From the NCBI RefSeq assembly GCF_036971445.1, contig NW_027212309.1:1-39908 (forward strand): DNA of 39,908 nt. The letters are read 5' to 3'. Under the pieces are notes generated by a model. It saw only the letters and a list, made by a program, of their open reading frames with translations. It did no database searches and was not told where the DNA came from. The DNA comes from Narcine bancroftii (Eukaryota). The position numbers and the translations under genes are program-made. Shown piece by piece: positions 8,201-34,823 of this stretch (position 1 is its first letter; the number at the start of each line of letters is the position of its first letter).

Positions 8201-8836
8201 CGTTGTCATACCCACACTCCTGTTCGGCTCCGAATCATGGGTCCTCTACCGGCACCACCTATGGCTCCTAGAACGCTTTCACCAGCGTTGTCTCCGCTCC
8301 ATCCTCAACATCCATTGGAGCGCTTACACCCCTAACGTCGAAGTACTCGAGATGGCAGAGGTCGACAGCATCGAGTCCACGCTGCTGAAGATCCAGCTGC
8401 GCTGGATGGGTCACGTCTCCAGAATGGAGGACCATCGCCTTCCCAAGATCGTGTTATATGGCGAGCTCTCCACTGGCCATCGTGACAGAGGTGCACCAAA
8501 GAAAAGGTACAAGGACTGCCTAAAGAAATCTCTTGGTGCCTGCCACATTGACCACCGCCAGTGGGCTGATAATGCCTCAAACCGTGCATCTTGGCGCCTC
8601 ACAGTTTGGCGGGCAGCAACCTCCTTTGAAGAAGACCGCAGAGCCCACCTCACTGACAAAAGGCAAAGGAGGAAAAACCCAACACCCAACCCCAACCAAC
8701 CAATTTTCCCTTGCAACCGCTGCAATCCTGTCTGCCTGTCCCGCATCGGACTTGTCAGCCACAAACGAGCCTGCAGCTGACGTGGACTTTTTACCCCCTC
8801 CATAAATCTTCGTCCGCGAAGCCAAGCCAAAGAAAA
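5281..8836 (+). mobile_element. RTE-clade non-LTR retrotransposon, copy 1 (5'-truncated UTR; single APE-RT ORF broken by a TAA at 7686-7688)
   Basis: APE endonuclease motifs (WNIRTM, LSEVR, SVYAPT, GDFNAR, LDYIL, TDHRLV) and RT motifs (QCGFR, FVDLTKAFD, GVKQGCVLAP, LFADD). A/G-rich tail; TSD ATCTCTAAATTT at 5269-5280 and 8837-8848. Confidence 0.95.
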
Positions 8837-9391
8837 ATCTCTAAATTTAAATTTGAAATTTAAATCAGCTACTTGATGGTTATTCATTGCCCCATCACAA
8901 TAAGACTCATACTGGAGACTAAAGGCACTTTTAGGTTGCCAAAATCCCCCTATGTAAAGCCACATATTATGCCCATATGTGTCTGTCAGGAGGCCACTTG
9001 AAAGCACAGGAGGTGGATGTGAGGCAAACTTTGTAACCCTCCTCCAGGAGGGATAGTCGCCGGAGTACTGAGGACCCCCGGCACCTGAATGCAGCCGCCT
9101 GAAAGCGAATGCTGAGGGGATGACAATATGCTGGTGAGCGCTTGACAGCTCCCCTCGCTGCTGCCCTGCCCGCTGGCACAGGACGTCAGGGCAGGGGCAG
9201 TGGGCATGGGCTGTCAGTGCTGGGGCAGCCAGCACGGTCAGTCAGGGTTGAGGTGACCGGCGCGGTCAGTCAGGGTTGAGATGACCAACGCGGGCTGTAG
9301 GGGTTGTAGGGCTGTAGTGGTTGGGGAGGACGGCGCGGGCTTTAGTGGTTGGATTGGCCGGTGCGGGCTGTAGTGGTTGGGCCTGCCAGTA

Positions 9392-16500: not shown

Positions 16501-16886
16501 TTATGCACAAGAGGTAAAACTATCAGTGAGAACAAGTGAGACATTGACCGAGGTGGGTTTGCTGTGAGATTTATTGATGCTTCTGAACAGATTAGTTGTG
16601 AGCGACTCATGTCCCACCACGCAGGAGAAAGTGGTGCCATGATCCCACTCCTCTGGAGAAACCTTCAACTGACTGGTCATCATGTTCCAGCCACTTCTGG
16701 GGTCCTCGGTCACTGGCTGGTTCACGTAGCCAGTCTTCAGAAGGATGTCGTTGGCCATCCAGGCCACGTAGATGTCTGCAGGAGAGAACTTCTTGACTAG
16801 GCACATCAGGGTTGCAGACTGATCGCCCTCTAACTCTTCTGATGAAGGGGGGAGGAGGAAGATGTGAGGAGAAGTCACAACTCCAC
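16501..16886 (-). CDS. IgW constant exon CH6 with secretory tailpiece
   Basis: Acceptor ttctgttcccag|; PHIFLLPPSSEE...ATLMCLVKKFSPADIYVAW...FSCVVGHESL. Tailpiece KPTSVNVSLVLTDSFTSCA* has an NVS sequon and penultimate Cys. Confidence 0.96.
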
Positions 16887-17419
16887 CTGGGAACAGAACG
16901 AACCTCAGTTAGGTTGCATCTTTCAATAATTCTGTGCTGAACCCACACATTGTGCTTTCAAACCAACATGGGCAACTTCTACATCTTGAGGGATTTCACT
17001 TTACCTGACACTGGAGCCTTTTCCCTTTCTACTCATTGTTGGGATGTGCAGGGTGGAAGCCTTGACTCGGACACATTTTAAAGCTTCCAGAGAGGTTTGT
17101 CTGTTTCGTTTAATCAGTGGAAGCCACTGATCACAGAGACTCCACAGAAAGTGGGTCAGACCATGGACTTGACTCATCCTGTGCTGTTTGGTCCATCTCC
17201 CCCTCTGCTTCAATGATCTGCTGAACTTCAGTCTGTGCCTCAGCCTCCCTGCCCTTCCACCCACTGCCTTGACTCAGTCTCTCCCTCAGGGTTTGAAAGC
17301 TGCAGATCCTTCTCCCTCGACATCATCACAGGAACTCACCCCGCAGCTGAGTTTGGTTTTGGATGAGGCTGCTGTGGTGATTTGGGGTCTTACTGGTTTT
17401 CTCTGGAGGCTTCAGTCTT

Positions 17420-17832
17420 CCTTTGCTCCTTAATATTCTCTGACCAACATGAGAAGACCTTCTCCAAGGCAAAGAAGAATGTGGGGAGTCTCATGGAAAC
17501 TATAACATTCTGAACTGATTGGACAGAATCGATACTGGAAGAATGTTCCTGATGGCGGCAGAATCCAGGAACAAGGGTGACAAGCTGAAGATGGTGTGAG
17601 AGGAGGAATGATAGAAAGGAGAATGGTGAACCTAGGGAATTCTCTGCCACAAAGAGCAGTTGAAGCCCAGTGAGTAAATATATCCAAAGATGAGCTGGAT
17701 ATTGTTCCAAGGGTAAAAGTTCAAGGGGCATGGAGAGAAGTCAGGAATAGGGGGCGCAATTTGAATAATCTGCTTTGATCATATTGAATGGCTAAGCAGC
17801 AATGAAGGGTTGAATGGCCTACTTCTACTCTC
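17420..17832 (+). mobile_element. Old CR1 LINE 3' fragment in the CH5-CH6 intron
   Basis: GAATTCTCTGCCACAAAGAGCAGTTGAAGCC core and GAATGGCCTACTTCTACTC terminus, similar to other CR1 ends here. Confidence 0.6.
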
Positions 17833-17980
17833 TAATTTTCCCTGAGACAACCACACTGCTGAATGGTGACATATGCTTTGCTTCTGTACATTACACAATG
17901 TAAATGACAAAACCTCAGTATTTATTATCATTCCTCTACTTGCTTAGATCAGAATCACACCAAGCTCTCTCTTCACGTAC

Positions 17981-18301
17981 CTGTGGCCTTCTTAATGGAC
18001 CTCTTCTCCGGTGTTGGCAAACTCTTGTCCTCCACCACGCACGAGTACTCAGTTCCTATCTCCCACTCCGCAGCGGGCACCGTCAGTCTGCTGATAATTA
18101 TGTCTTCACCTCCGTTCCTATTTGGACCCTGAGTTCTCACCCCATCTTTTCTCTCACTTCCATCCACTTGCCAGGTTACCCTGAATCCCTCTAAATCACC
18201 ATGGACCACCTCACATAGAATGGTCGCCGTCCTGTTCATCCAGATCTCTTCGAAGGAAGGTTTTCTTAAAGTGACTGAGGGGCTGGTATCTGAACAGTCA
18301 G
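17981..18301 (-). CDS. IgW constant exon CH5
   Basis: Acceptor tttctcccag|; ADCSDTSPSVTLRKPSFEEIWMNRTATILC...TWQVDG...EWEIGTEYSCVV; donor G|GTACGT. Confidence 0.95.
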
Positions 18302-19102
18302 CTGGGAGAAATGTCATAATTATTATTTTGTAGAGGCTCACTGGAGGCTTAATCGAACCAGCTCAAGAGGTTCCGAGTGATGTCATGATATTATTTGGAA
18401 CGTACGGTGTTTTCAAAATCTGCGCGTGACTGTTTGAGTAAAAGACTTTTACTGAACTTCAACTGGACTATGTCTGATCATTTTCTCATTCTTCAATACA
18501 CGCTGTAAACCAGTTGCTACAATTTCACCATTCCCCAAAGGATAGGGCATCACTGGTGAGACCAACATTTCATATTCATCTCCAGCAAATCATTCGTTGG
18601 TCGCATCAGATCAGTCGAGACTTATCTACATTGATGGAGGAATGAGATTTCCCCAATTGAGCAGACAGGGTAAACCCTTGTCAGGAATATCAATGAACAA
18701 ATTTGTCTCTGATGTAAGTTGGACAGTTTCAAGGACACTTAAGCTGTTCCCAGCCACTTATTAAAACAAAAACAGAAAATTCCAAACAATTCAGGCTGCA
18801 CCTGTGCAGAGGGAAGCAGAGCTAATATTTTAATTCAGAAATATTCCAGCAATTTTCCTTGACATTTTTAAAATTCAAGCAGCATCAGAAATAGTTGATC
18901 TTTATTACAACTGTTAAAATGCATTTGGCCTCCATGAAGTGTAACTGAAATCTCTTGCTGCTTTCTCAGAACGTTTTGTGTTCAAGCCGTCCTGCAGAGG
19001 CTTCCACATTGCCCAGGCTAACTCTTCCCATGCTGGAGCAGAGTGCTGTCCTGATGCAGATTCAGTCACGGCTGAGGCCATGACCAGAGGCCCAGATTAC
19101 AT

Positions 19103-19158
19103 TCAAAGACAGAAGGAGAGACCATTTGGAAGAGGGATATCCGGGATCTCCAGGGCAC
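19103..19158 (-). CDS. Candidate short secretory exon after CH4: GALEIPDIPLPNGLSFCL*
   Basis: Acceptor atttcactggccag| in phase with the CH4 donor. Penultimate Cys as in Ig tailpieces; AATAAA at 18906-18901. Confidence 0.62.
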
Positions 19159-19336
19159 CTGGCCAGTGAAATAGTTTGTATTGTGCTCAAGTTATGAAAG
19201 CAATTATTTCTCTGGCCAAGATTCTGGAGGATCCGTTCAGTCATCAAACCATAACAGGTCTGCACCATGTTTCTGTCTGGCACAGTTTATAGCAAAAAGC
19301 AAACAATGTCAACAATGGAGTGGGTCGGGACCTTAC

Positions 19337-19654
19337 CTTGGAGGTTCCTCGCTTCCTTTGTGATGCTGGTGTTGGAGGAGGGATGAGACACCGTGCAGCT
19401 GAAGATTGAGCCTGTCTTCCACTCCTGTGAACTCACCGTCAGGAAGTGGCTGGCACTGAAAGTCCCATCCTGCTCCAGAGCAGTCTGTGTCCTGCTGGTG
19501 TTGGAGGAGATCAGGGAGTGACCTTTCTTCCAGGTGACATCAATGTGGTCTGGGTAGAATCCCGAGACCACACACTCGAGGGTAGCCACATTCCTATGCT
19601 TAGCCTCTTCGTATGGTGGAGGCAGCAGTCTGGCCACAGGAGGTTTTGTCTCAA
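19337..19654 (-). CDS. IgW constant exon CH4
   Basis: Acceptor ttctgttccag|; VETKPPVARLLPP...ATLECVVSGFYPD...TWKK...EWKTGSIFSCTVSH; donor G|GTAAGG. 85-nt intron from CH3. Confidence 0.95.
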
Positions 19655-19739
19655 CTGGAACAGAAGAACAAAGAAAACATTGGACTCTTTCTCACATCAT
19701 CACTGATGTTTGTTATTTAATCAGTGATTTCTTACCCAC

Positions 19740-20039
19740 CTTTGGTGCTTTTTGTCCATGCTGAGACTGGTGAGGATAAATGATCTTGGGCAGAACACAT
19801 GTACTCCATCCCGCTGGACCACTCCTCCACGCTGGTCTGGAGTCGGCTGATTATTGTGTTTTGGAACCCTTTCCTTCTGGGCTGTTGGGTCACAGCTGCA
19901 TCACTTTTATCCTCTCCGTTCACCTCCCAGGAGATGTGGACTTTCTTCGGATCAGCAGAGATGACTGTGCACACCAGAGTAGCTGTTTTGTTGATCCATA
20001 TCTCTTGAATGGAGGGATTTTGAATTGAGACAAACAATT
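19740..20039 (-). CDS. IgW constant exon CH3
   Basis: Acceptor gatccacag|; ELFVSIQNPSIQEIWINKTATLVC...SWEVNG...EEWSSGMEYMC; phase-1 donor G|GTGGGT. Confidence 0.94.
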
Positions 20040-21070
20040 CTGTGGATCAGAAAGAGGAGATGTCAGAATTGTAGTGGAAACTTTTCTCTTTGTGATGGAA
20101 AGTCAAAGCAGATCCAAGTGCATTGTGGCAGTGAACTGGAAACAAGGTAACAGAAACTCGCAAGGGTGGAAAGGTGTGCTGCAAATGTTGGCTGGGAAAA
20201 TAAACTCAGTATAAAGGACCTGCCAAATGGGTTTAATCGCCTTCCCCACAACTGTGACCACAAGGTTCAGAGCAGGGACTCGATGGGAGGTGAGAGGCTG
20301 AACAACATTTTGATGCTGCAAAGCCAGTCACAGGTTTGTGGGAAGCCAGAAGAGAGGGAAGTGGGCATATTTCTCATCAGAGACAATTCAATATCTTCTT
20401 CACATGGAGCCCCTGTGGAATGAGTTACCTCCACTGAGCATTGTGAATCAATGAGAATCCTTTTCTCTGGACTGAGGCTGGGATTCCCTCAGTTTGTATT
20501 CAGTTAATAAATGCATCCTGGAATAAAACACTCTCTTTGGTGGTGGGGATTATAAAGTATTTGTGCTGTTATAAAACCCATCTGGTCCACTGTTGTTCAT
20601 CACCAGAAGAAATCTGTCATCTATACCTGGTCTGGTTGCATGTGACTCCAGACCTGCAGTTACATGGCCAAGCCCTGGTCCAGCAAAACCCTCAGTTCAA
20701 GAGCGATCAATGAGGGACATGAAATTGTGAATGAATATGATTCCTCTGTGACGGAGCTTTGGGGGCACCTGACATCTGGGTTTGAATCAGTTTTCTGTGA
20801 GTGTGCTCCAGTGAAGTGGTGCGGTGTTTTAATATTTGAAAATAACTATTTGAAAGAAAGATGTGGACAACTTGCTCTCCAGCAACAACAGAGCAAACCA
20901 TAAATCTGGAGAATAACAGAAATCTCCCTCATGCTGCACTTTGGGAAATTTTTGGAACAGATGTAGTTTCCCCGTTTCATTTTAGAATCGTTTGTTTCCT
21001 GTTTTCTGCAAAGCCACTGGTCTCCTCAAGCACCATCGTCACATCAGTTAAACTGCAGTTCACCATTTAC

Positions 21071-21236
21071 ACAATCAGTCACTTTGGTCCACGAGGGCTG
21101 TGTTTGCTTTCAAACACTTTTCAAGGAGGGTGATTATGTTTGTGTCAGGGTTGAAACCTTCACGACATTCAGCGTAAATTCCTCTATGGTATTTAGAGCA
21201 GATATAATGAACTCTGTGCCTGTCTGGCAGGACACA
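21071..21236 (-). pseudogene. Decayed sushi/CCP-like coding segment between CH2 and CH3
   Basis: CVLPDRHRVHYICSKYHRGIYAECREGFNPDTNIIT..., then after a frameshift QPSWTKVTDC. Resembles CCP spacing C-x-x-P...C-x-x-G-F...W-x5-C. Upstream in-frame stop and no clean acceptor. Confidence 0.4.
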
Positions 21237-22145
21237 TTTCATTTGATGACATATGATGTTATCTCTTGCTCAACCCATCTTTCTTTTAACAAGTGTTGAG
21301 CAATTTAAAAACATATGACAGGTACCTGGTGTTAGTCCAGATAAGATTTCTCGCAGTGTGTGGTCTGAAGTTTGTAAAGTGAGGTGTGTGGTGTCAGGGT
21401 TATTTCTTTCAGAATATTGGTTTAATCAGTACAGTGATGTTGTTGAACGTTTGTTTGTTGTTCAGTGCCATCCCATATCAATGACAAAATCCAATGCTCA
21501 GCCATCTCTGGTGAGAGGCAGTTCCCCCTCATAAGTCCTCACAGTGTCAAGATAGCTTTCCTTTTTGCAAAGTGCTGATATTATTCTATTAACCTTTGGG
21601 TGATTACACCCACACACTCCCCTCAGTGGCATTCCTTGTGATCACTGAGTTTCTCTCTTGGACTGAGTTCAGTGTCCAGGAAGTGAGTGAACAAAATGCT
21701 TCCAATGTTTGCTGTCCATCCCTTTCACACCAAGCGCGTGAGTTTGGTCAGGTCACTGGTGGGGTCCTGTGGTTTGTCTCACTGATTTGTCACAGGCCCC
21801 TTTTCTTACAGGTTGTCACATTCTGTAACTGAGCCAAGGTGACATTTCACCCCTGTATATCTTCAGCACCTCCTCCCCAAGCCACTGGCTGAGATGTAGT
21901 TTCTGGTTCTTGCTGACCTGGAAAGAAGGTGGTGAAGGGAAGTGGGGCTGGGATCTGAATCACACTGAACCAGCAATGTCCACAAATGAATGAGTGTACA
22001 TGTGAGGTGTGGAGTGGGGATGGGGCAGCTTGAATTGATGCCTTGTTCTCTGCTGCACTTTGATCTCAGTGGATATGGTGGGATAGATTTGAATCCAGAA
22101 AATGGATTGTAATAAAATTCACTGACGAATTCCACATGCAGCCAA

Positions 22146-22273
22146 TCACTTTATTTGACACTTTCCTTGTGAACAATGATACGGTCGGGTGGTACCATCA
22201 GAGAATGTCACATTGACATTAGTCTGCTGGAAGAATATCGGCACACACGTCGAACAGCTGGGACAGTTTTTAT
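22146..22273 (-). CDS. Cys-rich secretory exon of short-form IgW: DKNCPSCSTCVPIFFQQTNVNVTFSDGTTRPYHCSQGKCQIK*
   Basis: Acceptor cttccattttcag| in phase with CH2; 5 Cys; NVT sequon; AATAAA at 22155-22150. Matches the established two-C-domain short IgW/IgX form with a Cys-rich tail. Not in the ORF track. Confidence 0.88.
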
Positions 22274-22907
22274 CTGAAAATGGAAGATGCATAGATTTAA
22301 CCATTAGATATTCTCTCCTCTACTGGCTGCACTGAGAAAGGAAGTAGCTCCACACAGTCCCGACCTCTATTCTCTGCATTCACCATCTTTTAGGGATGAG
22401 ATAATGAAAACCAATGATGACCTGTTGTCCCAAGTTCTAATCCCAGTGTTTCTGAGGGGTTGGCCAACAGAATAATAATCCATCTTTGTGAGTGGATGAC
22501 GTGCCAGGGAGATTCCTGGGATACTGTGGAGATAGACTGTGGAGATTCATTCACTCGGCTGGAGCTATTTTTCCAGAAACTGAGACTGCAAAGTGAAAAG
22601 TGAAGGTGGAGATCTTCTCCACATGGTCTATCGGTTGGGACACATCTTGCTTGATGTCCCATTTCCCTTTCACTCCACACAGTAACCACAAGAATTATGT
22701 GGGAGTAAGTGCACAGGAGACTTAAACTTTCATTTTTGCTGTACAACAGATTGTGTTAAAATTAGTGACGGAAAGGGTTGGATTGAAATGTAGAGGGAAT
22801 AAATATCACACCTCACTCAACAGGACTCCCATCGGGGACATGAATTGAGTGGAGGTCAGCTAGTTGAATACTGTAAGTAAATTAATTCTCCTTCAGACAC
22901 CACTCAC

Positions 22908-23210
22908 CCCCCTGATATCTCATGACGATCTTCTCACTGAAGCTGGAAGGTTTATGGGTCACTTCACAAGAATATTCTTGTTCGCTGGTCCATTCATCCA
23001 CAGACAAGGTCAGGTAGGCAACAGTTTCAAATCCACCATCAGTTTTCGTGGAAGGGAGAAGAGTGCCCACTTGCTCTGATTTGCCTTTTTTCCAGGTCAC
23101 CTGAATCTTGTCAGGTGAGAATCCAGATATCACACAGCCTAGGATAGCAGTTGTTTGATTGCTGAGAACCTCCGGGGATGGAACAAGAGGCATGAGCTTT
23201 GGAGATTGAG
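22908..23210 (-). CDS. IgW constant exon CH2
   Basis: Acceptor tgttttacag|; QSPKLMPLVPS...ILGCVISGFSPDKIQVTWKK...EW...YSCEVTH; donor G|GTGAGT. Confidence 0.95.
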
Positions 23211-23700
23211 CTGTAAAACAATGCAATGTTAATGCAATATTACTGATGGCATAACTGGCCACAGTGTAGGTGGACTCCATTCCCCAACTCCATTTGCAAA
23301 TGCCCCAACAGCAGCCCACTCTACAAATCTGATCATTACAGATGACCTGTCGTAGGATGGATCCTATCGTGAGATGTTGGGTAGAGCTGTGATTGGGAGC
23401 TCAAGGTGTACAACACAGGCCTCCCCAGCATTATGTCCCACACTGCAGTGTTGAGGGGGTTGAACGAGGAAGTGGCCTGTGTGGGCAGACTATTGGTGAT
23501 CTGATTGTTTGGTGGAATGGCTGACTCCAGATCCTGTGGATATGAGCTGATGGGGTAGAACAGGACATTAGGGAAGCACAATATTGAGGACAATCAAAAA
23601 GAAGAACAGATGGACAAGAGGAAATTATTTGGTTTTAATGGCAATGATTTGCTCACATCTTAGAGGTGATGGATAAAGGTGAGTGGGGGATGTTGATTCT

Positions 23701-23825: not shown

Positions 23826-24122
23826 CTGAAATTAGATAAATGAGTGGATACAATGGAGGCTGTTCAGCACAGATTATTTCCTGTACATTCCACCAAAATT
23901 CAGTTTCATTGACTGGAGGAAACTGCCTCATTCTCCGTCTATTTCCACCTAATTTCTCTCTGCCTTTTTTGTGCGCTACAGCAGCACTGGCTTGTAGGAA
24001 TGGAAGAAATGAGTAAAGGAATGAATGGACATCCTTGAACATTTTTTGACAAAGGTTCCTGCTCTAGTTTTATCCCTCGACAGTAATGTAGTTTCAAATA
24101 GAAAATCAAATCTCATACTAAC

Positions 24123-24437
24123 GTTCAGCGAATATTTGTTCTGTGTTTGCTGTCACGAGCTCGGTTGACTTGTACCCTGCCTTGCAGTAGTAGATATTGT
24201 TGCTTTTCCAATCCGCCGCAGGGACTCGGAGCAAGCTGCTCATTGTGTACTTTGCATTCTGCCCCAACACTGCTGGATATTTCTTGATTCCATTGGTGAT
24301 GTCCCCACTGGCAGTGGACCATTTCTGGATGATGCTCTCAGGCTGATAATCCTTGACCAGACACAGGAGGCTGATCACTTGGTCAGATTCTCTGTGGCAG
24401 GGAGGGGCGATGAAGACTGACGGTAATGACTCAACCT
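24123..24437 (-). CDS. IgW constant exon CH1
   Basis: Acceptor cttttcag|; EVESLPSVFIAPPC...LLCLVKDYQPE...W...YYCKAGY. Extra N-terminal Cys typical for light-chain bonding; phase-1 donor C|GTTAGT. Confidence 0.93.
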
Positions 24438-24622
24438 CTGAAAAGTAAATAAATTCACAGACAGTCCTGTCAATAAATGCATGACCAACAGATGAAGCAA
24501 ACATCCAATGTCATTTCCAAATTCATTTACCGTGTTACAGAAATGGCTTCCCGACTTATGTCTCAACAGAGAGTCTATGTCTCTGAGGGAGAAAGGCATG
24601 GAATAATCCAAGGAACAGCAAA

Positions 24623-24848
24623 AGGCAGCTCGGTTAGTGTAGTGGTAGCACAACGCTGTTACACCACCACCAACTGGGGTTCAAATCTGGCGCTGTCTAT
24701 AAGGAGTTTGTACGTTTTCCCTGTGTGTGTGTGGGTTTCCTCCAACCATTCAAATTGTACCAGGGTGTGTAGTTCAATTGGGTGTAATTGGGTGGGACAG
24801 GCTCGTGGGGTGAAAACACTTGTTACCGTGCTATATGTCTAAATTTAA
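24623..24848 (+). mobile_element. V-SINE in the J-C intron
   Basis: GGCAGCTCGGTTAGTGTAGTGG head, GGGTTCAAAT B-box, GGAGTTTGTACG...GTGGGTTTCCTCC core, CTAAATTT tail. Confidence 0.72.
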
Positions 24849-25540
24849 TATTCAAAAATCCCACAGAGGAGATTTAAGCATGGCATATAAGGTGACTCTC
24901 TCCTGCAGTACTGAGGCAGTGTCCCAATGTCTGACGTGTGGGATTTTGATCAAAGTTGCACCAAATCTCTCCCTCAAATGCAACGAATGATCCTCAGTGA
25001 ATGTTTTGCACCAGAATATTGTTCACAGAAAAAAGGAAGAATTTGGCAGGAAGGTTATTGTATAAATCAGAACATTTCACCGGTAATGTTTTTGCATGGA
25101 ATGAAGTTACACCGGCCTGAATACCTGAACCTCGTCAATATGAAATGTGTGATATGGTGGCACCTGGGGACTCTTCTTCTGAAATTCAATTGAACTGACC
25201 CCACAGTGAATTTGTTCCTGCTTTACAGGTTTTCCAAATGTAGTGGCAGAGGAGCTTGATGAAGCAGGAGGGAATGTTAACATGGATAAGAAAGGAATTT
25301 GGAAATCCATTAGCCCAGTCCTGAGTAAATGCAGGAATCTTGGAAGGTTGAAAGGTTCACGGAATACACAGCTCCCAGTGTCCAGAGAGGAAATGCACCA
25401 GTTAAGAGGCAGAATCTACTTGAAAGATCTGGTTCTCATTTGACTGGAAAAGTGCAACCAATGATCATGTGGTTACTTCAGCTAATTCCTGAGTTCAGAT
25501 GGCATGAAAGCTACAAGCTTGTAAATGAGAAAAATATCAA

Positions 25541-28500
25541 GGTGTAGCCGCACGCTACTTGAAGTAAAGCTGCACACACGAGTGTAAACAGGTACGGCGG
25601 CCCCGGCCTCGGTCAAGTGTGACAGGCGGAGGCCCCGGTCCGGGCAGGGAGTGGGAGGCGGCGGTCCCAGTCCAGGCACAGGGAGAGCAGCAGCGGCCCC
25701 GGCCCCGGTCCGGGCGAAGGGTAGACGGCGGCGGCCTCGATCCGGGCAGGAGCAAGGGGGAGACGGCGGCCCCGGCCTCGGTCGAGTGGGGCAGGGGGAG
25801 GCCCCGGTCCGGGCAGAGAGTGGGAGGCGGCGGCCCCAGTCCAGGCACAGGGTGAGCTGCGGCGGCCTTGGCCCCGGTCCGGGCAGTATGGACCGACCTA
25901 GGAGGGGTGGCAGGCCCCTCCAGCCCGGGTAAGAAACCTGCATAGGAGAAGGCCACTCCGATATAAAACCTACGACCCAAGGACCTCGCAGCCACGTCCC
26001 AGCTTGCTTGGCCACGGCACACGAACCATGGGTGTAAAGGGTGGGGCCAGTACTGCGCGCACTGCACTCCACCTAAAAGCTCCTTTGCGCAGGACCGAGG
26101 ACAGGTCCACGTCCTCCCCCTCCACGTCCTCCCCCTCCACGTCCTCCCCCTCCACGTCCTCTCCCTCCACGCCTTCCCCCTCAAAAGATGCTCACAAACT
26201 CAAGCTAGCATGCTGGAACATCAGAACCATGCTAGACAAGGCTGACAGCCACCGACCTGAACGTCGGTCTGCCCTCATTGCACATGAACTCCTCAGACTT
26301 GACATCGACATAGCCGCTCTCAGTGAAGTCCGCCTGGCAGATGTAGGCAGCCTCCAAGAACGCGGCGCGGGCTACACACTCTACTGGTCTGGCAAGCCTT
26401 CGGATGAACGACGCCTATCTGGTGTAGGCTTCATGGTCAAGAGCTTCATTGCCTCCAAACTCGAAAACCTTCCGACAGGCCTCTCGGACCGAATCATGTC
26501 CATGCGACTCCCCCTTCAGAACAAGCGTCACATCACCCTCATCAGTGTCTATGCTCCAACCCTCCAGGCGGAACCAGCAGAAAAAAACAAGTTCTACACC
26601 GACCTGCGCAACCTCATCCAACGCACCCCTACAGCCGACAAGGTTGTCATCCTGGGCGACTTCAACGCTCGTGTCGGCAAAGACTCAGAAACCTGGCCAA
26701 GAATCCTGGGCAAGCATGGCGTCGGCAAGTGCAACGACAATGGGCGCCTCCTGTTGGAGCTCTGCGCAGAACAGCGGCTTGTCATTACAAACACCCTTTT
26801 TCAGCAGAGGGACAGCCTTAAGACCACCTGGATGCATCCCCGATCCAAGCACTGGCACCTCCTGGACTACATCCTGGTGCGAGAAAGTGACAAACGAGAT
26901 GTGCTCCACACCAGGGTCATGCCTAGCGCGGAATGCCACACTGACCACCGGCTGGTTCGCTGCAAGCTCAACCTTCACTTCAAACCAAAGCCCAGGAACA
27001 ATAAAGCCCCCAGAAAGAGGTTCAATGTAGGAAACCTGCAGTCAGACGAAGCGAGAGGAAACTTCCAGGCAAACCTCAAAGCAAAGCTCGACGATGCAAC
27101 CCGCCTCACGGACCCGTCCCCTGAAACCCTCTGGGATCAGTTGAAGACTACCATACTGCAATCCACTGAAGAGGTACTGGGCTTCTCCTCCAGGAAAAAC
27201 AAGGACTGGTTTGACGAAAACAGCCAGGAAATCCAGGAGCTGCTGGCAAAGAAGCGAGCTGCCCACCAGGCTCACCTTACAAAGCCGTCCTGTCCAGAGA
27301 AGAAACAAGCCTTCCGTCGCGCATGCAGCCATCTTCAGCGCAAACTCAGGGAGATCCAAAATGAGTGGTGGACTAGCCTCGCCAAACGAACCCAGCTCAG
27401 CGCGGACATTGGCGACTTCAGGGGTTTCTACGAGGCTCTAAAGGCTGTGTACAGCCCCTCACCCCAAGTCCAAAGCCCGCTGCGCAGCTCAGACGGCAAA
27501 GTCCTCCTCAGCGACAAGATCTCCATCCTCAACCGATGGTCAGAACACTTCCAATCTCTTTTCAGTGCCAACCGCTCAGTCCAAGATTCCACCCTGCTCC
27601 AGCTCCCTCAACAGCCCCTAAGGCTAGAGCTGGATGAGGTTCCCACCCTGGATGAGACATATAAGGCAATCGAACAACTGAAAAGTGGCAAAGCAGCAGG
27701 TATGGATGGAATCCCCCCAGAAGTCTGGAAGGCTGGCGGCAAAACTCTGCATGCCAAACTGCATGAGTTTTTCAAGCTTTGTTGGGACCAAGGTAAACTG
27801 CCTCAGGATCTTCGTGATGCCACCATCATCACCCTGTACAAAAACAAAGGCGAGAAATCAGACTGCTCAAACTACAGGGGAATCACGTTGCTCTCCATTG
27901 CAGGCAAAATCTTCGCTAGGATTCTACTAAATAGAATAATACCTAGTGTCGCCGAGAATATTCTCCCAGAATCACAGTGCGGCTTTCGCGCAAACAGAGG
28001 AACTACTGACATGGTCTTTGCCCTCAGACAGCTCCAAGAAAAATGCAGAGAACAAAACAAAGGACTCTACATCACCTTTGTTGACCTCACCAAAGCCTTC
28101 GACACCGTGAGCAGGAAAGGGCTTTGGCAAATACTAGAGCACATCGGATGTCCCCCAAAGTTCCTCAACATGATTATCCAACTGCACGAAAACCAACAAG
28201 ATACAGCAATGAGCTCTCTGACGCCTTCTCCATTAACAATTGCGTGAAGCAAGGCTGTGTTCTGGCACCAACCCTCTTTTCAATCTTCTTCAGCATGATG
28301 CTGAACCAAGCCATGAAAGACCCCAACAATGAAGACGCTGTTTACATCCGGTACCGCACGGATGGCAGTCTCTTCAATCTGAGGCGCCTGCAAGCTCACA
28401 CCAAGACACAAGAGAAACTTGTCCGTGAACTACTCTTTGCAGACGATGCCGCTTTAGTTGCCCATTCAGAGCCAGCTCTTCAGCGCTTGACGTCCTGCTT

Positions 28501-29440
28501 TGCGGAAACTGCCAAAATGTTTGGCCTGGAAGTCAGCCTGAAGAAAACTGAGGTCCTCCATCAGCCAGCTCCCCACCATGATTACCAGCCCCCCCACATC
28601 TCCATCGGGCACACAAAACTCAAAACGGTCAACCAGTTTACCTATCTCGGCTGCACCATTTCATCAGATGCAAGGATCGACAATGAGATAGACAACAGAC
28701 TCGCCAAGGCAAATAGCGCCTTTGGAAGACTACACAAAAGAGTCTGGAAAAACAACCAACTGAAAAACCTCACAAAGATAAGCGTATACAGAGCCGTTGT
28801 CATACCCACACTCCTGTTCGGCTCCGAATCATGGGTCCTCTACCGGCACCACCTACGGCTCCTAGAACGCTTCCACCAGCGTTGTCTCCGCTCCATCCTC
28901 AACATCCATTGGAGCGCTTACATCCCTAACGTCGAAGTACTCGAGATGGCAGAGGTCGACAGCATCGAGTCCACGCTGCTGAAGATCCAGCTGCGCTGGA
29001 TGGGTCACGTCTCCAGAATGGAGGACCATCGCCTTCCCAAGATCGTGTTATATGGCGAGCTCTCCACTGGCCACCGTGACAGAGGTGCACCAAAGAAAAG
29101 GTACAAGGACTGCCTAAAGAAATCTCTTGGTGCCTGCCACATTGACCACCGCCAGTGGGCTGATATCGCCTCAAACCGTGCATCTTGGCGCCTCACAGTT
29201 TGGCGGGCAGCAACCTCCTTTGAAGAAGACCGCAGAGCCTACCTCACTGACAAAAGGCAAAGGAGGAAAAACCCAACACCCATCCCCAACCAACCAATTT
29301 TCCCCTGCAACCGCTGCAATCGTGTCTGCCTGTCCCGCATCGGACTTGTCAGCCACAAACGAGTCTGCAGCTGACGTGGACTTTTTACCCCCTCCATAAA
29401 TCTTCGTCCGCGAAGCCAAGCCAAAGAAGAAGAAAGAAGA
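25541..29440 (+). mobile_element. RTE-clade non-LTR retrotransposon, copy 2 (longer GC-rich repetitive 5' UTR; frameshift at ~28200), in the J-C intron antisense to IgW
   Basis: Near-identical to copy 1; ORFs 26004-28247 and 28124-29374. 10-nt deletion (GTCGGGTCAG) relative to copy 1; (GAA)n-like tail. 5' boundary approximate and no TSD recognised. Confidence 0.95.
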
Positions 29441-32120
29441 ATGGGTGCTTAGGTTTTCATTACTTTAATCTTCTCAATGGCTTGAAAAGTTGTGAATCAT
29501 TTCTTAATGTTCAGTGTGTGACAAACGACATCTCCTCTATTTCCTCCACATCTGCTCCAACTCCCCCTCTCCTCTTCTCCACATTTTCCACTTCTCCAGC
29601 CTCTGCATTCAACAGATCAACCTTGGTGATTTCTGCCACCTTCAATGAGCTTCCACCACCAGGTGCATCTTCCCCTTCCCTTCCATTTCAGTGCTCTGAA
29701 GGGACTGTTTTCCTTGCACCTCCCTTGGCCACTTTTCATCTCCACATTTCACTCCCCTTACAGCACTCTCCCTGCAACCACAACACTTGCTTTTTCCCCT
29801 CTTTCCTCACTCTCCATGGATTGTTTACAAATAAAGGGATATCCAGCAAGTGGGCTTCCAAATGTGAGATAGGTGGACTTCAGGACCAACATGATCCTGT
29901 TAAAATGCAGGATAAAACTGGCAGTAGGAGGGAACCTTGGACAATGAGGGATTTCAAGGATCTGGTCATGGAAAGACAAGGAGGCACATGGACAAGTTGG
30001 GTTGAAGGGTTGGTTTCTGAGCTATGACTCCATGACAGATTTGATAGCAGGAGATTTTGTTTTGGCCCATTGTCAGAATTATCTGGAGCAGAGTTGTGGG
30101 CAAGACTAGTCTTGGCCACCAAAATAGAGTCACAGAGTCAGAGAGGGTTGAAACAGTCCCTTTGGCCCTACTTGCATGCACTGACCAGAATGTCTGACCC
30201 ACACTCATCCCACCTGCCTGCTTTTCATGTCTTTCCCTCCAAATTTATCCATGTATCAATCCACATTTTTCTTAAAACATGCCTCAACTTCCTCTTCTGC
30301 CAGCCCATTCCATACAGCCACCACCCTCTGTTTAAAAAAGTTATGCCTCATGTTCCATTGGATATATTCTGCGAATGAAAGGATAGTGAGCAAACTTTGG
30401 CCAAGATTTCAATTAGGTGGAAAATAAAATTACAAAATATTTACTTCACAATAGTTTCCTCCAGTAGATGGAGGTGAAATGTTGAACTGCAGTGCACAAT
30501 GGTGCAGGAGAAACTCAGCAGGTCACTCAGCACTGATGGGAAGTAAAGGGTAACCAGCATTTCAGCCCTGAACCCTTTGTCAAGGTAATGAACAAAAAGC
30601 AGTGCTGATATCTTGCTTCAAAGACATTATTCAACCAGATAGCAATGGCCATGATTCCCAGGTGTCAGCTTCTCTGAGGATCTGTCCTGGAGCCTCCATT
30701 TTGATGCAACAACAAAGAAGGTTCCCCAGTACCTATACAACCCAGACCTGTGTTGTGGTGAAGTGTCACAGGACAGGAGTTAGCTGGACCATAACTACAC
30801 TCAATGGGCTGAATGGCGCTGGTCTGGCCTGCTATTGGGACTCTCCCCACCCTGCCACACAGGAAAAGGTGGGACCTGGCTGGGCCTCAGGATGTTGGAG
30901 ACCTGCAGTGAGGAGCACCAAGACCTCAACACCCTATGGTTTCATTTCTGGGTCTCTGGGCCAAGAACACCCTGACACAAAGCAAACCTGGGTTAGCAAA
31001 GCTGTCATGTAACATAACAAATTTAAATGTCTGAAACATAAAAACTGACGTAAATTCTGCCACAAAAGGTACTTTGTTTAAAATAAGCGATCTACAGTTC
31101 ACTGAAACCACAAAATGTACCCCGAAGTCCTTCATCACAAATGATCTTCCCAGATCTGCCGACCGAGAGTTCCCAGATGAATGGGGACTGTGAGCCTTTA
31201 CCAGGCCCAACTTGGTAGCGAATCATAGTGTTGGAATCCCTCTTGTAATCCTGGGAAGCCCAGCTCCATGTGGAGAAGTGTGGTGAATGGCCCACTACAT
31301 CTCAGTAAACTCTGTAAAGTGGGTCTGTGCATGTCCAGGACTAACTGTAGTGCACGTGGCTGCACACTGTTGGTCCCCTTTGGAACTGCCACTCACTGCA
31401 AGCACTGTCTGATCCTGGTGAGCCTCAGCTTCATAAGGAGTCAGCAATTCAAGTAAAGGATGATCTGAGGAACCTCACTGCTCTTCATTGATGTCAGCCC
31501 TTAGTAATACAGGGATTCCTGGAGCAAAGAACTGGGATCATCTGGATGCCCTCCAGCCAATCAATGTCTGTCCATTCATCCACAGCAGAGTCATTCTTCA
31601 GCAGAGGAGTCCCCAGTGGAGGAGAACTTTGGGAACTCGGGTCCCTCCCGACATCACTAAAGCAGACCGTCTGGACTTTTTCCTGGTTCCGTTTGTGGGA
31701 CCAAGCTGCAGACAAGTTGGGTACAATGTGTCTGCACCTCAAGGGCTAGGGAAGAGTTTGGGATGTTTTGGGGATATGAAAATCAATGAAAAACACAAAT
31801 GAACTTTCACCAAATAAAAGGGTCAAAATAAAAATGAAAGAGGCTGGGTGTCAAAAATCTGACTGAAGGACTTTAATGAAAGGCCATTGATGTAAAATAT
31901 AATCTCTGTGTCCTTTCCCACAGAGGATCGGAGAGCTGCCGAGTGTCTCTGGTGGAGAGGCACAACGTCAGTGAGTGGGATTTACATCCAAGGTTCTTCT
32001 ACATCCCAAGATCTGCAGATTGTAAGTGCAATTTAATTGGGATCAGTGTTCTGAATGATGGTCAGGAGGTGAACTTGGAAAACACATCAAATCGTCAGCA
32101 GGGAGTCAAGTGTAGAGGGT

Positions 32121-32950
32121 TAGAAGCTGAGTGGGTCAGCAGGATGCTGGGATGGAGAGGGGAGAAGTGCTTGGTGGGACAGCAAGGTGCTGGGATGGAG
32201 GATGAGGAGCTGGGTGGGGCAGCGGGGTGCTGGGATGGAGAGGGAGGAGCTGGGTGGGACAGCAGGGTGCTGGGGTGGCGAGGCGAGAAGGGCTGGGTGG
32301 GTCAGCAAAATACTGGGGTGGAGAGGGGAGAAGTGCTTGGTGGGACAGCATAGTGCTAGGATAGAGGGGGGAGGAGCTGGGTGGGACAGCAGGGTGTTGG
32401 AGTGGATGGGGGAGAGGAGCCCATTGGACAGCAGGATAATGGGGTGGAGGGGAGATTTTCTGGGTGGGACAGCAGGGTGCTGGTGTGGAGAGGGGAGAGG
32501 TGCTGGGATGGAGGGGAGGAGCTGGGTGGGACAGTGGGGTGCTGAGATGGAGGGGAGGAGCTGGGTTGGACAGCAGGGTGCTGGAGAGGAGAGGTGAGAG
32601 GTGCTGGGTGGGTTAGCAGGATGCTGGGATGGAGAGAGAAGTGCTTGGTGGGACACCAGTGTTCTGGGGTGGAGAGGGGACAGGAGGTGGGAGGTACAGC
32701 AGTGTGCTGGGGTGGAGATGGGAGAGGTGCTGGGTGGGTCAGCATAGAGTTAGGATAGAGGGGGGTGGAGCTGGGTGGGACAGCAGAGTGCTGGACTGAA
32801 ATGGGTAGAGGAGCCCATTGGATAGCAGGGTGCTGGAGTGGAGGTGACAGGAGCTGGGTGGAACTGCAGGGTGCTGGGGTGGAGGTGACAGGAGCTGAAT
32901 GGGACAACAGGGTGCTGGGGTGGAGGTGGGTTTGATAACACAGTGCTGGA
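32121..32950. repeat. G-rich (plus strand) degenerate tandem repeat in the J-C intron, switch-region-like
   Basis: Recurrent unit GGAGCTGGGTGGGACAGCAGGGTGCTGGGGTGGAG, roughly 35-45 nt, with higher-order repetition. Confidence 0.92.
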
Positions 32951-33445
32951 TTTTCCAAAAGAATAACCTGGGGATGTGGGAATCAGCAGCTCGGTTTGGA
33001 TTCGGCCTCATCTCAGGAAGTGGAAAGAACATCAGAAAAATTAGGCATTTTGACTCTAAACTCTGAGCCATGTTAATACATAATGTGGACTGAAATGCTT
33101 AGAGTTCTCGAGCATCTCTAAATATTGCAATTCAAGAGAAAAGAGAAAGCAAATTTGTTCAGCTGAAAAATCACATCTCAACCGGGTTCACTGGAACCCT
33201 GGGGTTATTCAGACTTTAACCGGATCACACATGTGCGGACCTTTTCCCCAGCCAGGTCTTATCTAACAGTTATAACCACGAAAGCAGCCGACAGGAAACC
33301 CCGATTCCAGTAACTGGAGAAACCGCCCGTCTCGGGGAGATTCAAGTAATTGCTTCAATATCTCACTGGCCTCAGTGAATCAGCTCAAAGGGCAAATTAA
33401 TAAAATACAAATGGGAAAGGGTGGAATGGAGAAGTAGGGTCTTAC

Positions 33446-33490
33446 CTGAAGTCACTGTCAGCGAGGTTCCTTTCCCCCAGTAGTCGAGCG
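33446..33490 (-). CDS. JH segment LDYWGKGTSLTVTS
   Basis: WGxG motif and phase-1 donor TCAG|GTAAG at 33445. Confidence 0.96.
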
Positions 33491-33529
33491 CACACTGCTC
33501 CGTCTCCCGACTCTCCCAATACAGTAACT
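33491..33529 (+). promoter_or_regulatory. JH 5' RSS (23-RSS)
   Basis: Plus-strand CACACTG (33491-33497), 23-nt spacer, nonamer ACAGTAACT (33521-33529). Confidence 0.82.
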
Positions 33530-33854
33530 TCACTGAGCCGTCACCTCCAGTTATCTCAGCCAAGTGTCAGAATGAACCCTGTCCGGACCAGGAGCAGCCG
33601 CTTCCCAAATCTCTGTCACCAACTCCGTCCTCGTCTCTTCCTGACGAGTGAATAAAAGCAGCATTTTGGGCAGTTTTCCTGTCTGCCGGCACCGGCTCCC
33701 CCGCCCCGCGAGAAACTCAGTCGCCGGCTTTGGGGTGTTTAATTGCCGGCAAATGGACATTTCCTCAGTCTTCGGGGATGTGACCCTGGGAAGCAGCAAT
33801 GCGGGATCCGTGGAGACAGACTGCGCTGCAGACGCTCATTTGTAGGGCGGGACC

Positions 33855-33882
33855 AGTTTCTGCTCAGCTCCCCACCACCGTG
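33855..33882 (-). promoter_or_regulatory. J-facing RSS of D segment (12-RSS)
   Basis: Minus-strand CACGGTG (33882-33876), 12-nt spacer, nonamer GCAGAAACT (33863-33855). No nonamer at a 22/23-nt spacing. Confidence 0.85.
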
Positions 33883-33897
33883 GCTCCCAGTTATAGT
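33883..33897 (-). other. DH segment ACTATAACTGGGAGC (15 nt)
   Basis: Short segment bracketed by two outward-facing CACGGTG heptamers, each with a 12-nt spacer and a nonamer. Lies midway between V and J. Confidence 0.9.
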
Positions 33898-33925
33898 CAC
33901 GGTGACACACCGCCGTTCAACAACC
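33898..33925 (+). promoter_or_regulatory. V-facing RSS of D segment (12-RSS)
   Basis: Plus-strand CACGGTG (33898-33904), 12-nt spacer, nonamer TCAACAACC (33917-33925). Confidence 0.85.
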
Positions 33926-34236
33926 TCCGTCCCTCGCTCTGTCTCCGACCCCACTCTCCCCTCAGTTAAACCGTCCCGACACTGTCCCGGCTCACAGATC
34001 CCCTCCCATCCACACTGGCCAGGGGGCTGGGGCCGCCGCTTCGTGCTCCTGGTTCCGATACTCCAGTCCCATCCGCGGCGCTTGGCTCCGACCTGTTCTG
34101 TGATCGATCCCCTCGTCCTTCAACCACTCGCCTCCTATTGCAGGGAGGGTCGACGGGGGCACAGCAAGGCCGGGAATCCCTGTGGTGATCACTGCTGCCC
34201 TCTCACTCCGCGCCCTGAGGGCAGGCGCTCTCGCTG

Positions 34237-34275
34237 GGTTTTTGCAGCGGTCCAACCCCGCTTCCTCTCGCCGTG
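34237..34275 (-). promoter_or_regulatory. VH 3' recombination signal sequence (23-RSS)
   Basis: Heptamer CACGGCG (34275-34269), exactly 23-nt spacer, nonamer GCAAAAACC (34245-34237). Confidence 0.92.
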
Positions 34276-34573
34276 TCTCTCGCACAGTAATAGGTGGCCG
34301 TGTCTTCCACTTTCAGCTTGTTCATTTGTAGGTAGAAGTTGTTACTTCCCTTGGAAGCGGTGAATCTGTCTTGGATTCCAGGCGCGTAATACTTGTAACT
34401 TTCGCTATCATACGCCACCAACCATTCCAGCCCTTTCCCGGAGACCTGTTTCACCCAGGACATGTAGTAGCTGCTGAGATCGAACCCTCTGGTCTCACAG
34501 GTCAGTCTGTAGGACTCCCCGGGCTTCTTCACCGCTGACGCGACCTGTGTCAGGACGACGTCGGACCGCACGC
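34276..34573 (-). CDS. Unrearranged germline VH segment (IgW-type)
   Basis: Acceptor ttttactgacag| then (G)VRSDVVLTQ...LTC...[15 protein letters not shown]...RFTASK...[14 protein letters not shown]. Canonical V-domain Cys/Trp/Cys; followed immediately by an RSS. Confidence 0.97.
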
Positions 34574-34682
34574 CTGTCAGTAAAAGAGAAAAGAGTGGAT
34601 TTTAATGATCGGTTCAACGGCGAGAGAGTCTCCGAGAAGCAGCCGGGCCCGGCCGGGCTGGGTGAAGACACGGGGCACCCAC

Positions 34683-34728
34683 CTGCCAGACAGGACAGAA
34701 AGAGAAAGAGATAAGGAGCGATCCCCAT
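34683..34728 (-). CDS. IgW heavy chain leader (signal peptide) exon, MGIAPYLFLFLSCLA(G)
   Basis: ATG at 34728 followed by 15 hydrophobic codons plus 1 nt. Donor CAG|GTGGGT at 34682, phase 1, matches the VH exon acceptor. Confidence 0.9.
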
Positions 34729-34816
34729 CGCCCCGCGCACTGAGCCAGACTTGGACACTCCACAGATCGGCGGCTTCAGCTCAGACCGGCTTTGTCGGGA
34801 GCTGCAGTGAGCGCTG

Positions 34817-34823
34817 TTTAAAT
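34817..34823 (-). promoter_or_regulatory. TATA-like element (ATTTAAA) of the VH promoter
   Basis: Only AT-rich patch in GC-rich DNA, about 90 nt upstream of the leader ATG. Confidence 0.5.

What the first reader, a model, noticed from the sequence alone, without database searches (positions are those of the whole stretch)
32121..32950. Switch-region-like GAGCT/GGGT repeat packed with AID hotspots just inside the J-C intron of an IgW cluster
Seen: an ~830-bp tandem repeat starts ~500 nt downstream of the JH donor. It is built of GAGCT, GGGT/GGGGT, AGCA and TGCT motifs. A hand count gives about 45 WGCW tetramers, against about 13 expected at uniform base composition. Known: mammalian S-mu is made of GAGCT/GGGGT pentamers at this same position, WGCW is the overlapping AID hotspot, and cartilaginous fish switch C regions between clusters although conventional S regions are generally considered absent. 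Inference: this could be a proto- or convergent switch region. Caveat: the G-rich strand is the template strand for IgW transcription, opposite to mammalian S regions. R-loops would need antisense transcription, for which the GC-rich 5' UTR of the plus-strand RTE at ~25.5 kb is a conceivable source. WGCW motifs themselves are orientation-independent.
Basis: partly seen in the sequence, partly recalled or inferred. Interest (0 to 1): 0.85.

Follow-up and report, generated by a model that had tools for sequence, protein, structure and literature searches.

The report
Hotspot-rich repeat in ray IgW intron
An expressed electric-ray IgW antibody gene has an 0.8-kb G-rich tandem repeat, unusually rich in the DNA motif that the antibody-mutating enzyme AID prefers, just after its J segment; it looks like a small class-switch region in a group said to lack them, but faces the opposite way to mammalian ones and nothing yet shows that it is used.

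Summary
Window 32121-32950 is a tandem array of 20 decayed units of about 42 nt. It starts 495 nt after the JH splice donor, inside the 9.0-kb JH-CH1 intron of a minus-strand IgW cluster (V plus six C1-set exons).

It has 45 WGCW sites, against 6.4 expected from its own composition, and is the densest stretch in the window. Counting the array as one amplified unit still gives P about 0.002-0.004. Two other G-rich arrays in the window have only 10-12 WGCW per kb.

The array is low-copy in DNA runs. It is present at 100% identity in RNA-like runs that also show VDJ joints and J-to-CH1 splicing. It is as stable as its flanks in a second genome.

Points against a switch region:
- The G-rich strand is the template strand.
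- AGCT is sparse (9 sites).
- The array is short.
- No junctions were seen in it.

I could not fetch paralogous or orthologous clusters. Four unchecked scan notes report similar arrays in other IgW clusters of this genome.

My estimates: 0.45 that it acts as an R-loop-independent AID break zone, 0.38 that it is a neutral fossil minisatellite, and 0.25 that it is a selected switch region.

The parts
32121..32950 (.). Tandem array of 20 decayed units of about 42-43 nt. It is G-rich on the + strand and C-rich on the IgW sense strand. The consensus unit has three WGCW sites (A/T-GCT, AGCA, TGCT).
   Evidence: TRF; segmentation and per-site retention; motif counts
24438..33445 (-). JH-CH1 intron, 9,008 nt. 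The array occupies intron nt 496-1325.
   Evidence: Donor gtaag after 33446; RNA loose end at 33446 equals the CH1 start at 24437 with 0 mismatches
33446..33490 (-). JH segment (reads ..DYWGKGTSLTVTS), with an RSS heptamer-like CAGTGTG at 33491-33497.
   Evidence: Sequence; V(D)J joints end at 33479-33491 in runs X1 and X6
34276..34573 (-). VH exon (V-set). Coding ends at 34276 and is followed by a non-canonical heptamer CACGGCG and a nonamer CAAAAACCC.
   Evidence: Pfam V-set E 6.5e-15; sequence; joints at 34275-34279
34683..34728 (-). Leader exon (ATG at 34728). A TATA-like TTTAAA lies near 34820, so the transcription start is near 34790.
   Evidence: Sequence; leader-to-V splice seen as a loose end at 34580. 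The start site is inferred.
24121..24437 (-). CH1 exon (C1-set). The 5' end is mapped; the 3' end is only bounded by the open frame.
   Evidence: Pfam C1-set E 4.5e-14
16504..23400 (-). CH2-CH6 exons, within open frames 22885-23400, 19735-20046, 19290-19691, 17976-18362 and 16504-16908. The last carries a secretory tail.
   Evidence: Five C1-set hits, E 6.7e-10 to 2.8e-21; translations
25500..29500 (+). Frameshifted APE+RT LINE inside the intron, pointing towards the array. Its GC-rich 5' end has 32-nt repeats. The boundaries are approximate.
   Evidence: Pfam Exo_endo_phos and RVT_1; composition; TRF
30500..30781 (.). High-copy dispersed element inside the intron. It serves as a contrast for the copy number of the array.
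   Evidence: DNA run X2 depth 2e4-9e4 here, against about 45-58 in the unique intron

Best explanation
The array is an old, low-copy, G-rich minisatellite 0.5-1.3 kb into the JH-CH1 intron of an expressed IgW cluster. It is transcribed with the IgW pre-mRNA.

After VDJ joining it lies about 1.05-1.9 kb from the inferred V promoter. In mammals, AID-driven hypermutation reaches that far.

Each unit carries three palindromic AID hotspots (WGCW). At these sites the hot C on one strand lies next to the hot C on the other strand. Dense WGCW therefore turns deaminations into closely opposed nicks, and so into double-strand breaks.

I think the array most likely works as a passive break-prone zone that needs no R-loop. 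That would make it a weak functional analogue of a switch region, closer in logic to Xenopus S-mu than to mammalian S regions. It could feed the inter-cluster C-region exchange known from sharks.

Shown: the anatomy, the hotspot excess, the low copy number, the coverage in RNA-like runs and the stability between two genomes.

Inferred: AID access, break formation and use in switching. Selection for this role is not shown.
For: - WGCW is 54/kb, against 18-22/kb in the rest of the intron and 19.6/kb in the window. This is 7 times the composition expectation.
- Under a one-amplified-unit null, P = 0.002-0.004.
- Two other G-rich tandem arrays in the window hold only 10-12 WGCW/kb, so G-rich repetition alone does not give this density.
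- The three WGCW windows rank 1st, 2nd and 4th of 40 four-mer windows for retention across the decayed units. WGCW columns are 0.867 identical against 0.795 for the rest, P = 0.019.
- 63% of the Cs on the G-rich strand are in WRC context.
- Place: intron nt 496-1325 after JH.
- Contigs 100% identical to the array occur in runs X1 and X6, which show VDJ joints and J-CH1 splicing. The depth ratio of transposon to unique intron is 56 in X1 and about 1,750 in DNA run X2, so the intron signal is mostly RNA.
- Depth in the DNA run is 48-116 in the array and 45-58 in the flanks, so it is low copy.
- Literature: sharks exchange C regions between clusters without conventional S regions (PMC4279169, PMC8201067). 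AID mutates a switch core equally in both orientations (review PMC5485518). A synthetic 720-bp cassette with 50 AGCT/kb supports switching (PMC4245955).
Against: - The sense strand has 10% G and no G4 motif, so R-loops are not expected under IgW transcription. In mouse cells, dense hotspots without R-loops switch poorly (PMC5485518, PMC4245955).
- On the sense strand only 13% of Cs are hot (WRC) and 40% are cold (SYC).
- AGCT is only 9 of the 45 WGCW sites.
- The array is short, at 0.83 kb.
- No joints or loose ends in the array appeared in RNA-like runs X1 and X6 in the part of the output that was shown. Contigs drop rare variants, so this is weak evidence.
- The retention test is confounded. 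The least retained columns are G/GA runs, which are prone to slippage and misalignment.
- Conservation among paralogs can be explained by descent alone.
- Reviews state that shark Ig loci lack S regions.
Confidence: 0.45

Rival explanations
1. Neutral fossil minisatellite. A chi-like G-rich array (GCTGG cores) amplified once in an ancestral IgW intron, decayed, and was copied along with cluster duplications. Its hotspot content is a by-product of the unit sequence and has no measurable effect on antibody genes.
For: - Units are only 77% alike and show no neighbour structure, so the array is old and no longer turning over.
- Divergence between two genomes inside the array (4 of 442 nt) is like that of the flank (6 of 1074 nt).
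- Two of the three WGCW sites sit in the two similar halves of the unit, so they stem from one duplicated half-unit.
- The orientation is wrong for R-loops.
- Reviews say shark loci need and have no S regions (PMC4279169, PMC8201067).
- G-rich minisatellites are common in vertebrates (own knowledge).
Against: - The WGCW density is improbable for a composition-matched unit (P 0.002-0.004).
- It is absent from the other G-rich arrays of the window.
- WGCW sites are the best-kept parts of the unit.
- The array sits where switch junctions are reported in nurse shark (abstract recalled from memory; the paper is not held).
Confidence: 0.38
2. The array has another cis-acting role. One possibility is that G4-prone DNA on the template strand pauses RNA polymerase II, or that C-rich intronic RNA binds poly-C proteins to tune IgW splicing or expression. 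Another is that it is a germline recombination or gene-conversion hotspot that homogenises neighbouring V exons between clusters.
For: - There are five G4 motifs on the template strand and none on the other strand.
- Composition is extremely skewed (GC skew +0.6).
- A scan note (s1-878396, unchecked) reports a gene-conversion signature between clusters.
Against: There is no direct evidence for any of these roles. No E-box-type enhancer motifs stand out in the unit. No Rfam family matches in the window.
Confidence: 0.1
3. The array is part of a dispersed transposon-borne satellite that landed in the intron by insertion.
For: The intron does hold transposons: a LINE at 25.5-29.5 kb and a high-copy element at 30500-30781.
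Against: DNA-run depth in the array is 1-2.5 times single copy, against 400-1,900 times for the nearby element. The flanks on both sides are single copy. The core matches nowhere else in the 40-kb window. Limit: copies less than 90% alike would not have been laid.
Confidence: 0.05
4. The array is an assembly artefact.
For: Repeats are error-prone in assemblies.
Against: Contigs from four runs of three studies and two organism labels reproduce stretches of the array. Two RNA-like runs match at 100%, and a 442-nt contig differs by 4 letters.
Confidence: 0.02

Closest known systems
Mammalian switch regions (S-mu pentamers; S-gamma-type 49-nt repeats)
   Same: Intronic tandem repeat between the VDJ or I exon and CH1. 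G-clusters together with GAGCT, GGGT and WGCW motifs. A unit length of tens of nt, like S-gamma (own knowledge). Transcribed.
   Different: The G-rich strand is the template strand, not the non-template strand. The array is 0.83 kb rather than 1-12 kb. AGCT is a minority of the hotspots. There is no I-exon or promoter of its own. Junctions are not shown.
Xenopus S-mu (AT-rich, AGCT-based)
   Same: The hotspot palindrome is the main feature, rather than non-template G-richness. It is the model for switching that leans less on G-richness (PMC4279169).
   Different: The Xenopus region is AT-rich, several kb long and AGCT-rich. It was later found to form R-loops and to depend on orientation (PMC5485518). 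Here the array is 62% G+C and AGCT-poor.
Synthetic minimal switch cassette of Zhang et al. (9 x 80 bp, 4 AGCT per repeat; PMC4245955)
   Same: Nearly the same size (720 vs 830 bp), hotspot density (50 vs 54 per kb) and G-density of the rich strand (46% vs 52%).
   Different: The cassette works with the G-rich strand as non-template, and 29% G already lowers switching. Here the sense strand has 10% G.
Sigma-delta, the non-canonical switch-like region 5' of C-delta in human and mouse (PMC8861003)
   Same: A short, atypical switch-like stretch serving the IgD/IgW lineage. IgW is held to be the IgD counterpart (PMC12227049, PMC8201067).
   Different: Sigma-delta lies between C-mu and C-delta in a translocon locus and pairs with S-mu. 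Here every cluster has its own VDJ and the array follows JH. No homology was tested.
Nurse-shark J-C intron switch zone (Zhu et al. 2012; Zhang et al. 2013)
   Same: Same gene organisation and same intron. Inter-cluster joins are reported in the intron 3' of JH (reviews PMC4279169, PMC8201067).
   Different: It is described as lacking repeats and conventional S regions. The primary papers are not held, so I could not check whether any hotspot-rich array was noted.
Classical G-rich, chi-like hypervariable minisatellites
   Same: G-rich strand asymmetry, GCTGG cores and a unit of tens of nt (own knowledge).
   Different: This array is decayed and stable between genomes, and it carries three WGCW sites per unit.

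Membership tests
Immunoglobulin switch (S) region, general | Lies in the intron 5' of the CH1 exon, downstream of the VDJ or I-exon promoter | tested here: met
   Intron nt 496-1325 of the 9,008-nt JH-CH1 intron
Immunoglobulin switch (S) region, general | Tandemly repetitive, 1-12 kb | tested here: inconclusive
   It is tandem, with 20 units, but only 0.83 kb. A scan note reports a 1.5-kb version in another cluster (unchecked).
Immunoglobulin switch (S) region, general | Strong excess of AID hotspot palindromes (AGCT/WGCW) | tested here: met
   WGCW 54/kb, against 19.6/kb in the window and 6.4 expected per 830 nt; P 0.002 under the amplified-unit null. AGCT alone is only 10.8/kb.
Immunoglobulin switch (S) region, general | Transcribed in B cells | tested here: met
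   Contigs 100% identical to the array occur in runs with VDJ joints and J-CH1 splicing. The depth ratios argue for RNA rather than DNA carry-over. Strand and cell type are not known.
Immunoglobulin switch (S) region, general | Somatic recombination junctions and AID-type mutations map inside it | not testable with these tools
   Only contigs were available. None of the shown joints lies in the array, and 85 joints were not shown. Targeted long reads of B-cell DNA are needed.
Mammalian-type, R-loop-forming S region | G-rich, G-clustered NON-template strand | tested here: not met
   The sense (non-template) strand has 10.1% G, 2.4 GGG per kb and no G4 motif. The template strand has 51.7% G, 105 GGG per kb and 5 G4 motifs.
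Mammalian-type, R-loop-forming S region | Own germline (I) promoter and exon upstream | tested here: inconclusive
   None is evident. The V promoter would serve, as it does for S-mu. A + strand exon-like piece at 31923-31972 (AG...GT) is unsupported, because the RNA contigs run through it unspliced.
Dispersed or transposon-borne satellite | Many near-identical copies across the genome | tested here: not met
   DNA depth is 48-116 in the array, 45-58 in the flanks and 2e4-9e4 in a true repeat nearby. Copies less than 90% alike were not assessed.
G-rich minisatellite | Tandem units of 10-100 nt with strand asymmetry | tested here: met
   Unit about 42 nt, GC skew +0.6
IgW (omega) heavy-chain cluster | V-D-J followed by six C1-set exons in one minilocus, expressed | tested here: met
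   V-set plus six C1-set exons on one strand, with VDJ joints and J-CH1 splice. The isotype name rests on the domain count and on scan notes. No named IgW relative was retrieved.

The most novel reading that the evidence does not exclude
Batoid IgW clusters carry a selected, conserved switch region built on WGCW palindromes. It would work without sense-strand R-loops, through its place in the hypermutation window, template-strand G4 pausing or antisense transcription. If so, repeat-based targeting of AID for C-region exchange predates tetrapods, and the textbook statement that cartilaginous fish lack S regions would need revising.
Probability: 0.25. Interest if true: 0.85.

Novelty: new variant of a known kind. 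Interest (0 to 1): 0.58.

Why it matters
Reviews state that cartilaginous fish exchange constant regions between Ig clusters without switch regions (PMC4279169, PMC8201067). How AID-made breaks are focused there is an open question.

A hotspot-dense repeat at the expected place in a ray IgW gene gives that question a concrete, testable target. One amplicon design can ask whether junctions and mutations pile up in 0.8 kb.

The inverted strand bias also makes it a natural experiment on whether hotspot density alone, without R-loops, is enough in an early vertebrate. If the array proves neutral, it is a caution that switch-like composition can arise in ordinary minisatellites.

Tried and rejected
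- **Paralogs through proteins (ORF search).** I translated the long open frame across the repeat (window:32123-32749:-) and searched the 5.8-billion protein set. No hit reached E 0.001.
- **Paralogs through proteins (V exon).** The VH exon search returned only distant V domains, 69% identity at best and none from rays. One Scyliorhinus torazame protein on a 159-kb contig was found.
- **Fetching that contig.** No catshark or paralogous intron could be read.
- **Scan notes by sequence.** This look-up was blank, which means nothing on this genome.
- **Primary papers.** Zhu 2012, Zhang 2013, Zhang 2014 (Cell Rep) and Zhang 2015 are not held.
- **Rfam.** No family matches in the window.
- **Ig octamer.** A search for ATGCAAAT near the V promoter found only a chance-level site at 38664.
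- I recomputed the same test from the window reference.
- **Read laying.** It gave contigs only, so strand, transcript ends and rare somatic junctions could not be seen.
- **Spliced model.** Exons were searched apart, by reference.
- **Rejected: artefact.** Four runs reproduce the array.
- **Rejected: high-copy transposon satellite.** The DNA depth rules it out.
- **Rejected: higher-order 83-nt structure.** No lag signal was found.

Full report
**What is there.** Tandem Repeats Finder reports one large array at 32125-32926, with period 41-43 (also 83), about 19-20 copies and 72-73% matches. Aligning the stretch to a cyclic consensus derived from the window gives 20 units, one of them truncated. 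Mean pairwise identity is 0.77, with no rise between neighbours or at lag 2. So it is an old, decayed array, and the 83-nt period is not a real higher order. The + strand has 51.7% G and 10.1% C, with GC skew about +0.6.

They are exact: 45 WGCW, 9 AGCT, 14 AGCA, 21 TGCT, 8 GAGCT, 34 GGGT and 10 GGGGT.

**Gene context.**
- The minus strand carries a V-set exon (34276-34573) and six C1-set exons between 24437 and 16504.
- The leader ATG is at 34728.
- A JH segment ends at 33446 and is followed by gtaag.
- Six C domains in one minilocus is the IgW long form (own knowledge). Scan notes call this genome an electric ray.
- The JH-CH1 intron runs from 24438 to 33445, which is 9,008 nt. The array fills intron nt 496-1325.
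- A frameshifted APE+RT LINE lies on the + strand at about 25.5-29.5 kb, inside the same intron.

**Expression and copy number.**
- Runs X1 and X6, which the tool only guesses to be RNA, behave as RNA from a lymphoid tissue. They hold hundreds of V-to-J joints with inserted letters.
- They also hold a leader-to-V splice, and contigs that leave the genome at 33446 and continue with 27 letters that match this window's CH1 start exactly.
- Depth is about 1e6 on the V exon and about 270-740 across the intron. Contigs 100% identical to parts of the array are included (32065-32271 and 32368-32534).
- The high-copy element at 30641-30781 is 56 times deeper than the unique intron in X1, but about 1,750 times deeper in DNA run X2. 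The intron signal is therefore mostly pre-mRNA and not DNA carry-over. This is my inference.
- Strand cannot be read from contigs.
- In DNA run X2 the array has depth 48-116, against 45-58 in the flanks. So it is low-copy at 90% likeness or above. It is not a transposon-borne satellite.
- A second organism label (X9) has a 442-nt contig across ten units with 4 differences and one gap, against 6 differences in 1,074 nt of flank. The array is therefore as stable as its surroundings.

**Is the hotspot excess meaningful?**
- Shuffling the 830 nt gives 6.4 +/- 2.5 WGCW. That test overstates the case, because a tandem array multiplies its unit.
- I therefore simulated composition-matched random 42-nt units. 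This gave P(3 or more WGCW per unit) = 0.004. After amplifying to 20 copies with similar decay, P(45 or more) = 0.002.
- Two internal controls are the other G-rich arrays of the window, at 9185-9381 and 25595-25847. They have 10-12 WGCW/kb, below the window mean of 19.6. The rest of the intron has 18-22, and the array has 54.
- Within the decayed units, the three WGCW windows are kept in 14/19, 15/19 and 15/20 units. They rank 1st, 2nd and 4th of 40 four-mer windows.
- At site 1 the first base alternates between A and T, which keeps the motif.
- WGCW columns are 0.867 identical, against 0.795 for the rest (P = 0.019).
- This retention signal is mild and confounded, because the least kept columns are G/GA runs that slip and misalign.
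- The unit looks like two related halves, each starting W-GCTGGG. Two of the three sites therefore share one origin.

**Against a mammalian-type S region.**
- The IgW sense (non-template) strand has 10% G, 2.4 GGG/kb and no G4 motif. The template strand has 105 GGG/kb and five G4 motifs.
- R-loops under IgW transcription are therefore not expected.
- On the sense strand only 13% of Cs are in WRC and 40% are in cold SYC context. On the G-rich strand 63% of the few Cs are WRC.
- In mouse cells, lowering non-template G from 46% to 29% cuts switching (PMC4245955). Hotspots without R-loops switch poorly, and inverted S-gamma1 is impaired (review PMC5485518).
- The same review reports that AID mutates a switch core equally in both orientations. 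Orientation therefore bears on steps after deamination, which may differ in sharks.
- AGCT is only 10.8/kb, and the array is short.

**Why a switch-like role is still plausible.**
- The inferred start site is near 34790, from a TATA-like box near 34820.
- VDJ joining removes about 790 nt. That puts the array about 1.05-1.9 kb from the promoter, within the reach of hypermutation in mammals (own knowledge).
- Reviews report that shark VDJs are expressed with C regions of other clusters. They describe this as a process tied to hypermutation and without conventional S regions (PMC4279169, PMC8201067).
- Size, hotspot density and G-density of the rich strand are close to those of a synthetic cassette that supports switching: 720 bp, 50 AGCT/kb and 46% G (PMC4245955).

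**Paralogs and orthologs.** The ORF search was blank. The V exon search found no ray proteins.

The scan's own notes list four other first-reader findings of switch-like arrays in J-C introns on other pieces of this genome, of 807, 823, 826 and 1,484 nt. These notes are unchecked leads. Even if true, shared descent of a fossil array would explain them.

**Verdict.** The array is not an artefact and not a high-copy satellite. It meets the positional, repetitive, hotspot and transcription criteria of a switch region. It fails the non-template G-richness criterion. The junction criterion is untested.

My estimates:
- 0.45 that it works as an R-loop-independent AID break zone.
- 0.38 that it is a neutral fossil minisatellite.
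- 0.10 that it has another cis role.
- About 0.07 that it is a dispersed satellite or an artefact.

Separately, I put 0.25 on it being a selected switch region.

Noticed in passing
window 5430-8780 and 26004-29374 (+): There are two copies of the same APE+RT LINE, each with a 15-nt tandem motif near its 5' end (5532-5578 and 26106-26182). The second copy is frameshifted and sits inside the JH-CH1 intron.
   Followed up: partly
window 30500-30781: A very high-copy dispersed element lies inside the intron. DNA contig depth is 2e4-9e4, against about 50 for unique sequence, and many loose ends occur at 30507-30721.
   Followed up: no
window 34269-34275 (-): The V-segment RSS heptamer reads CACGGCG rather than CACAGTG. 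Even so, V-J joints are abundant at 34275-34279 in the RNA-like runs. These joints may come from paralogous V segments at least 90% alike.
   Followed up: no
window 33764: DNA contigs of X2 and X9 carry a 14-nt insertion in the D-J region relative to the window. This is an indel polymorphism or a paralog difference.
   Followed up: no
window 31923-31972 (+): An exon-like piece on the antisense strand has an AG before it and GTGAGT after it, and lies just upstream (+ sense) of the array. RNA contigs cross it unspliced, so nothing supports its use.
   Followed up: partly
window 31852-32094: Besides the near-identical contig, the RNA-like runs hold a second contig with 14-17 differences (about 93% identity). 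A diverged paralog or allele of this intron segment is therefore also transcribed.
   Followed up: no
window 33602-34165: The D-region DNA, which VDJ joining removes, still has depth of about 1e4 in the RNA-like runs. This suggests germline or partly rearranged transcripts of the cluster.
   Followed up: no
window 9185-9381: G-rich 28-nt tandem arrays lie just after the 3' end of the first LINE copy. They are poor in WGCW (10/kb).
   Followed up: partly
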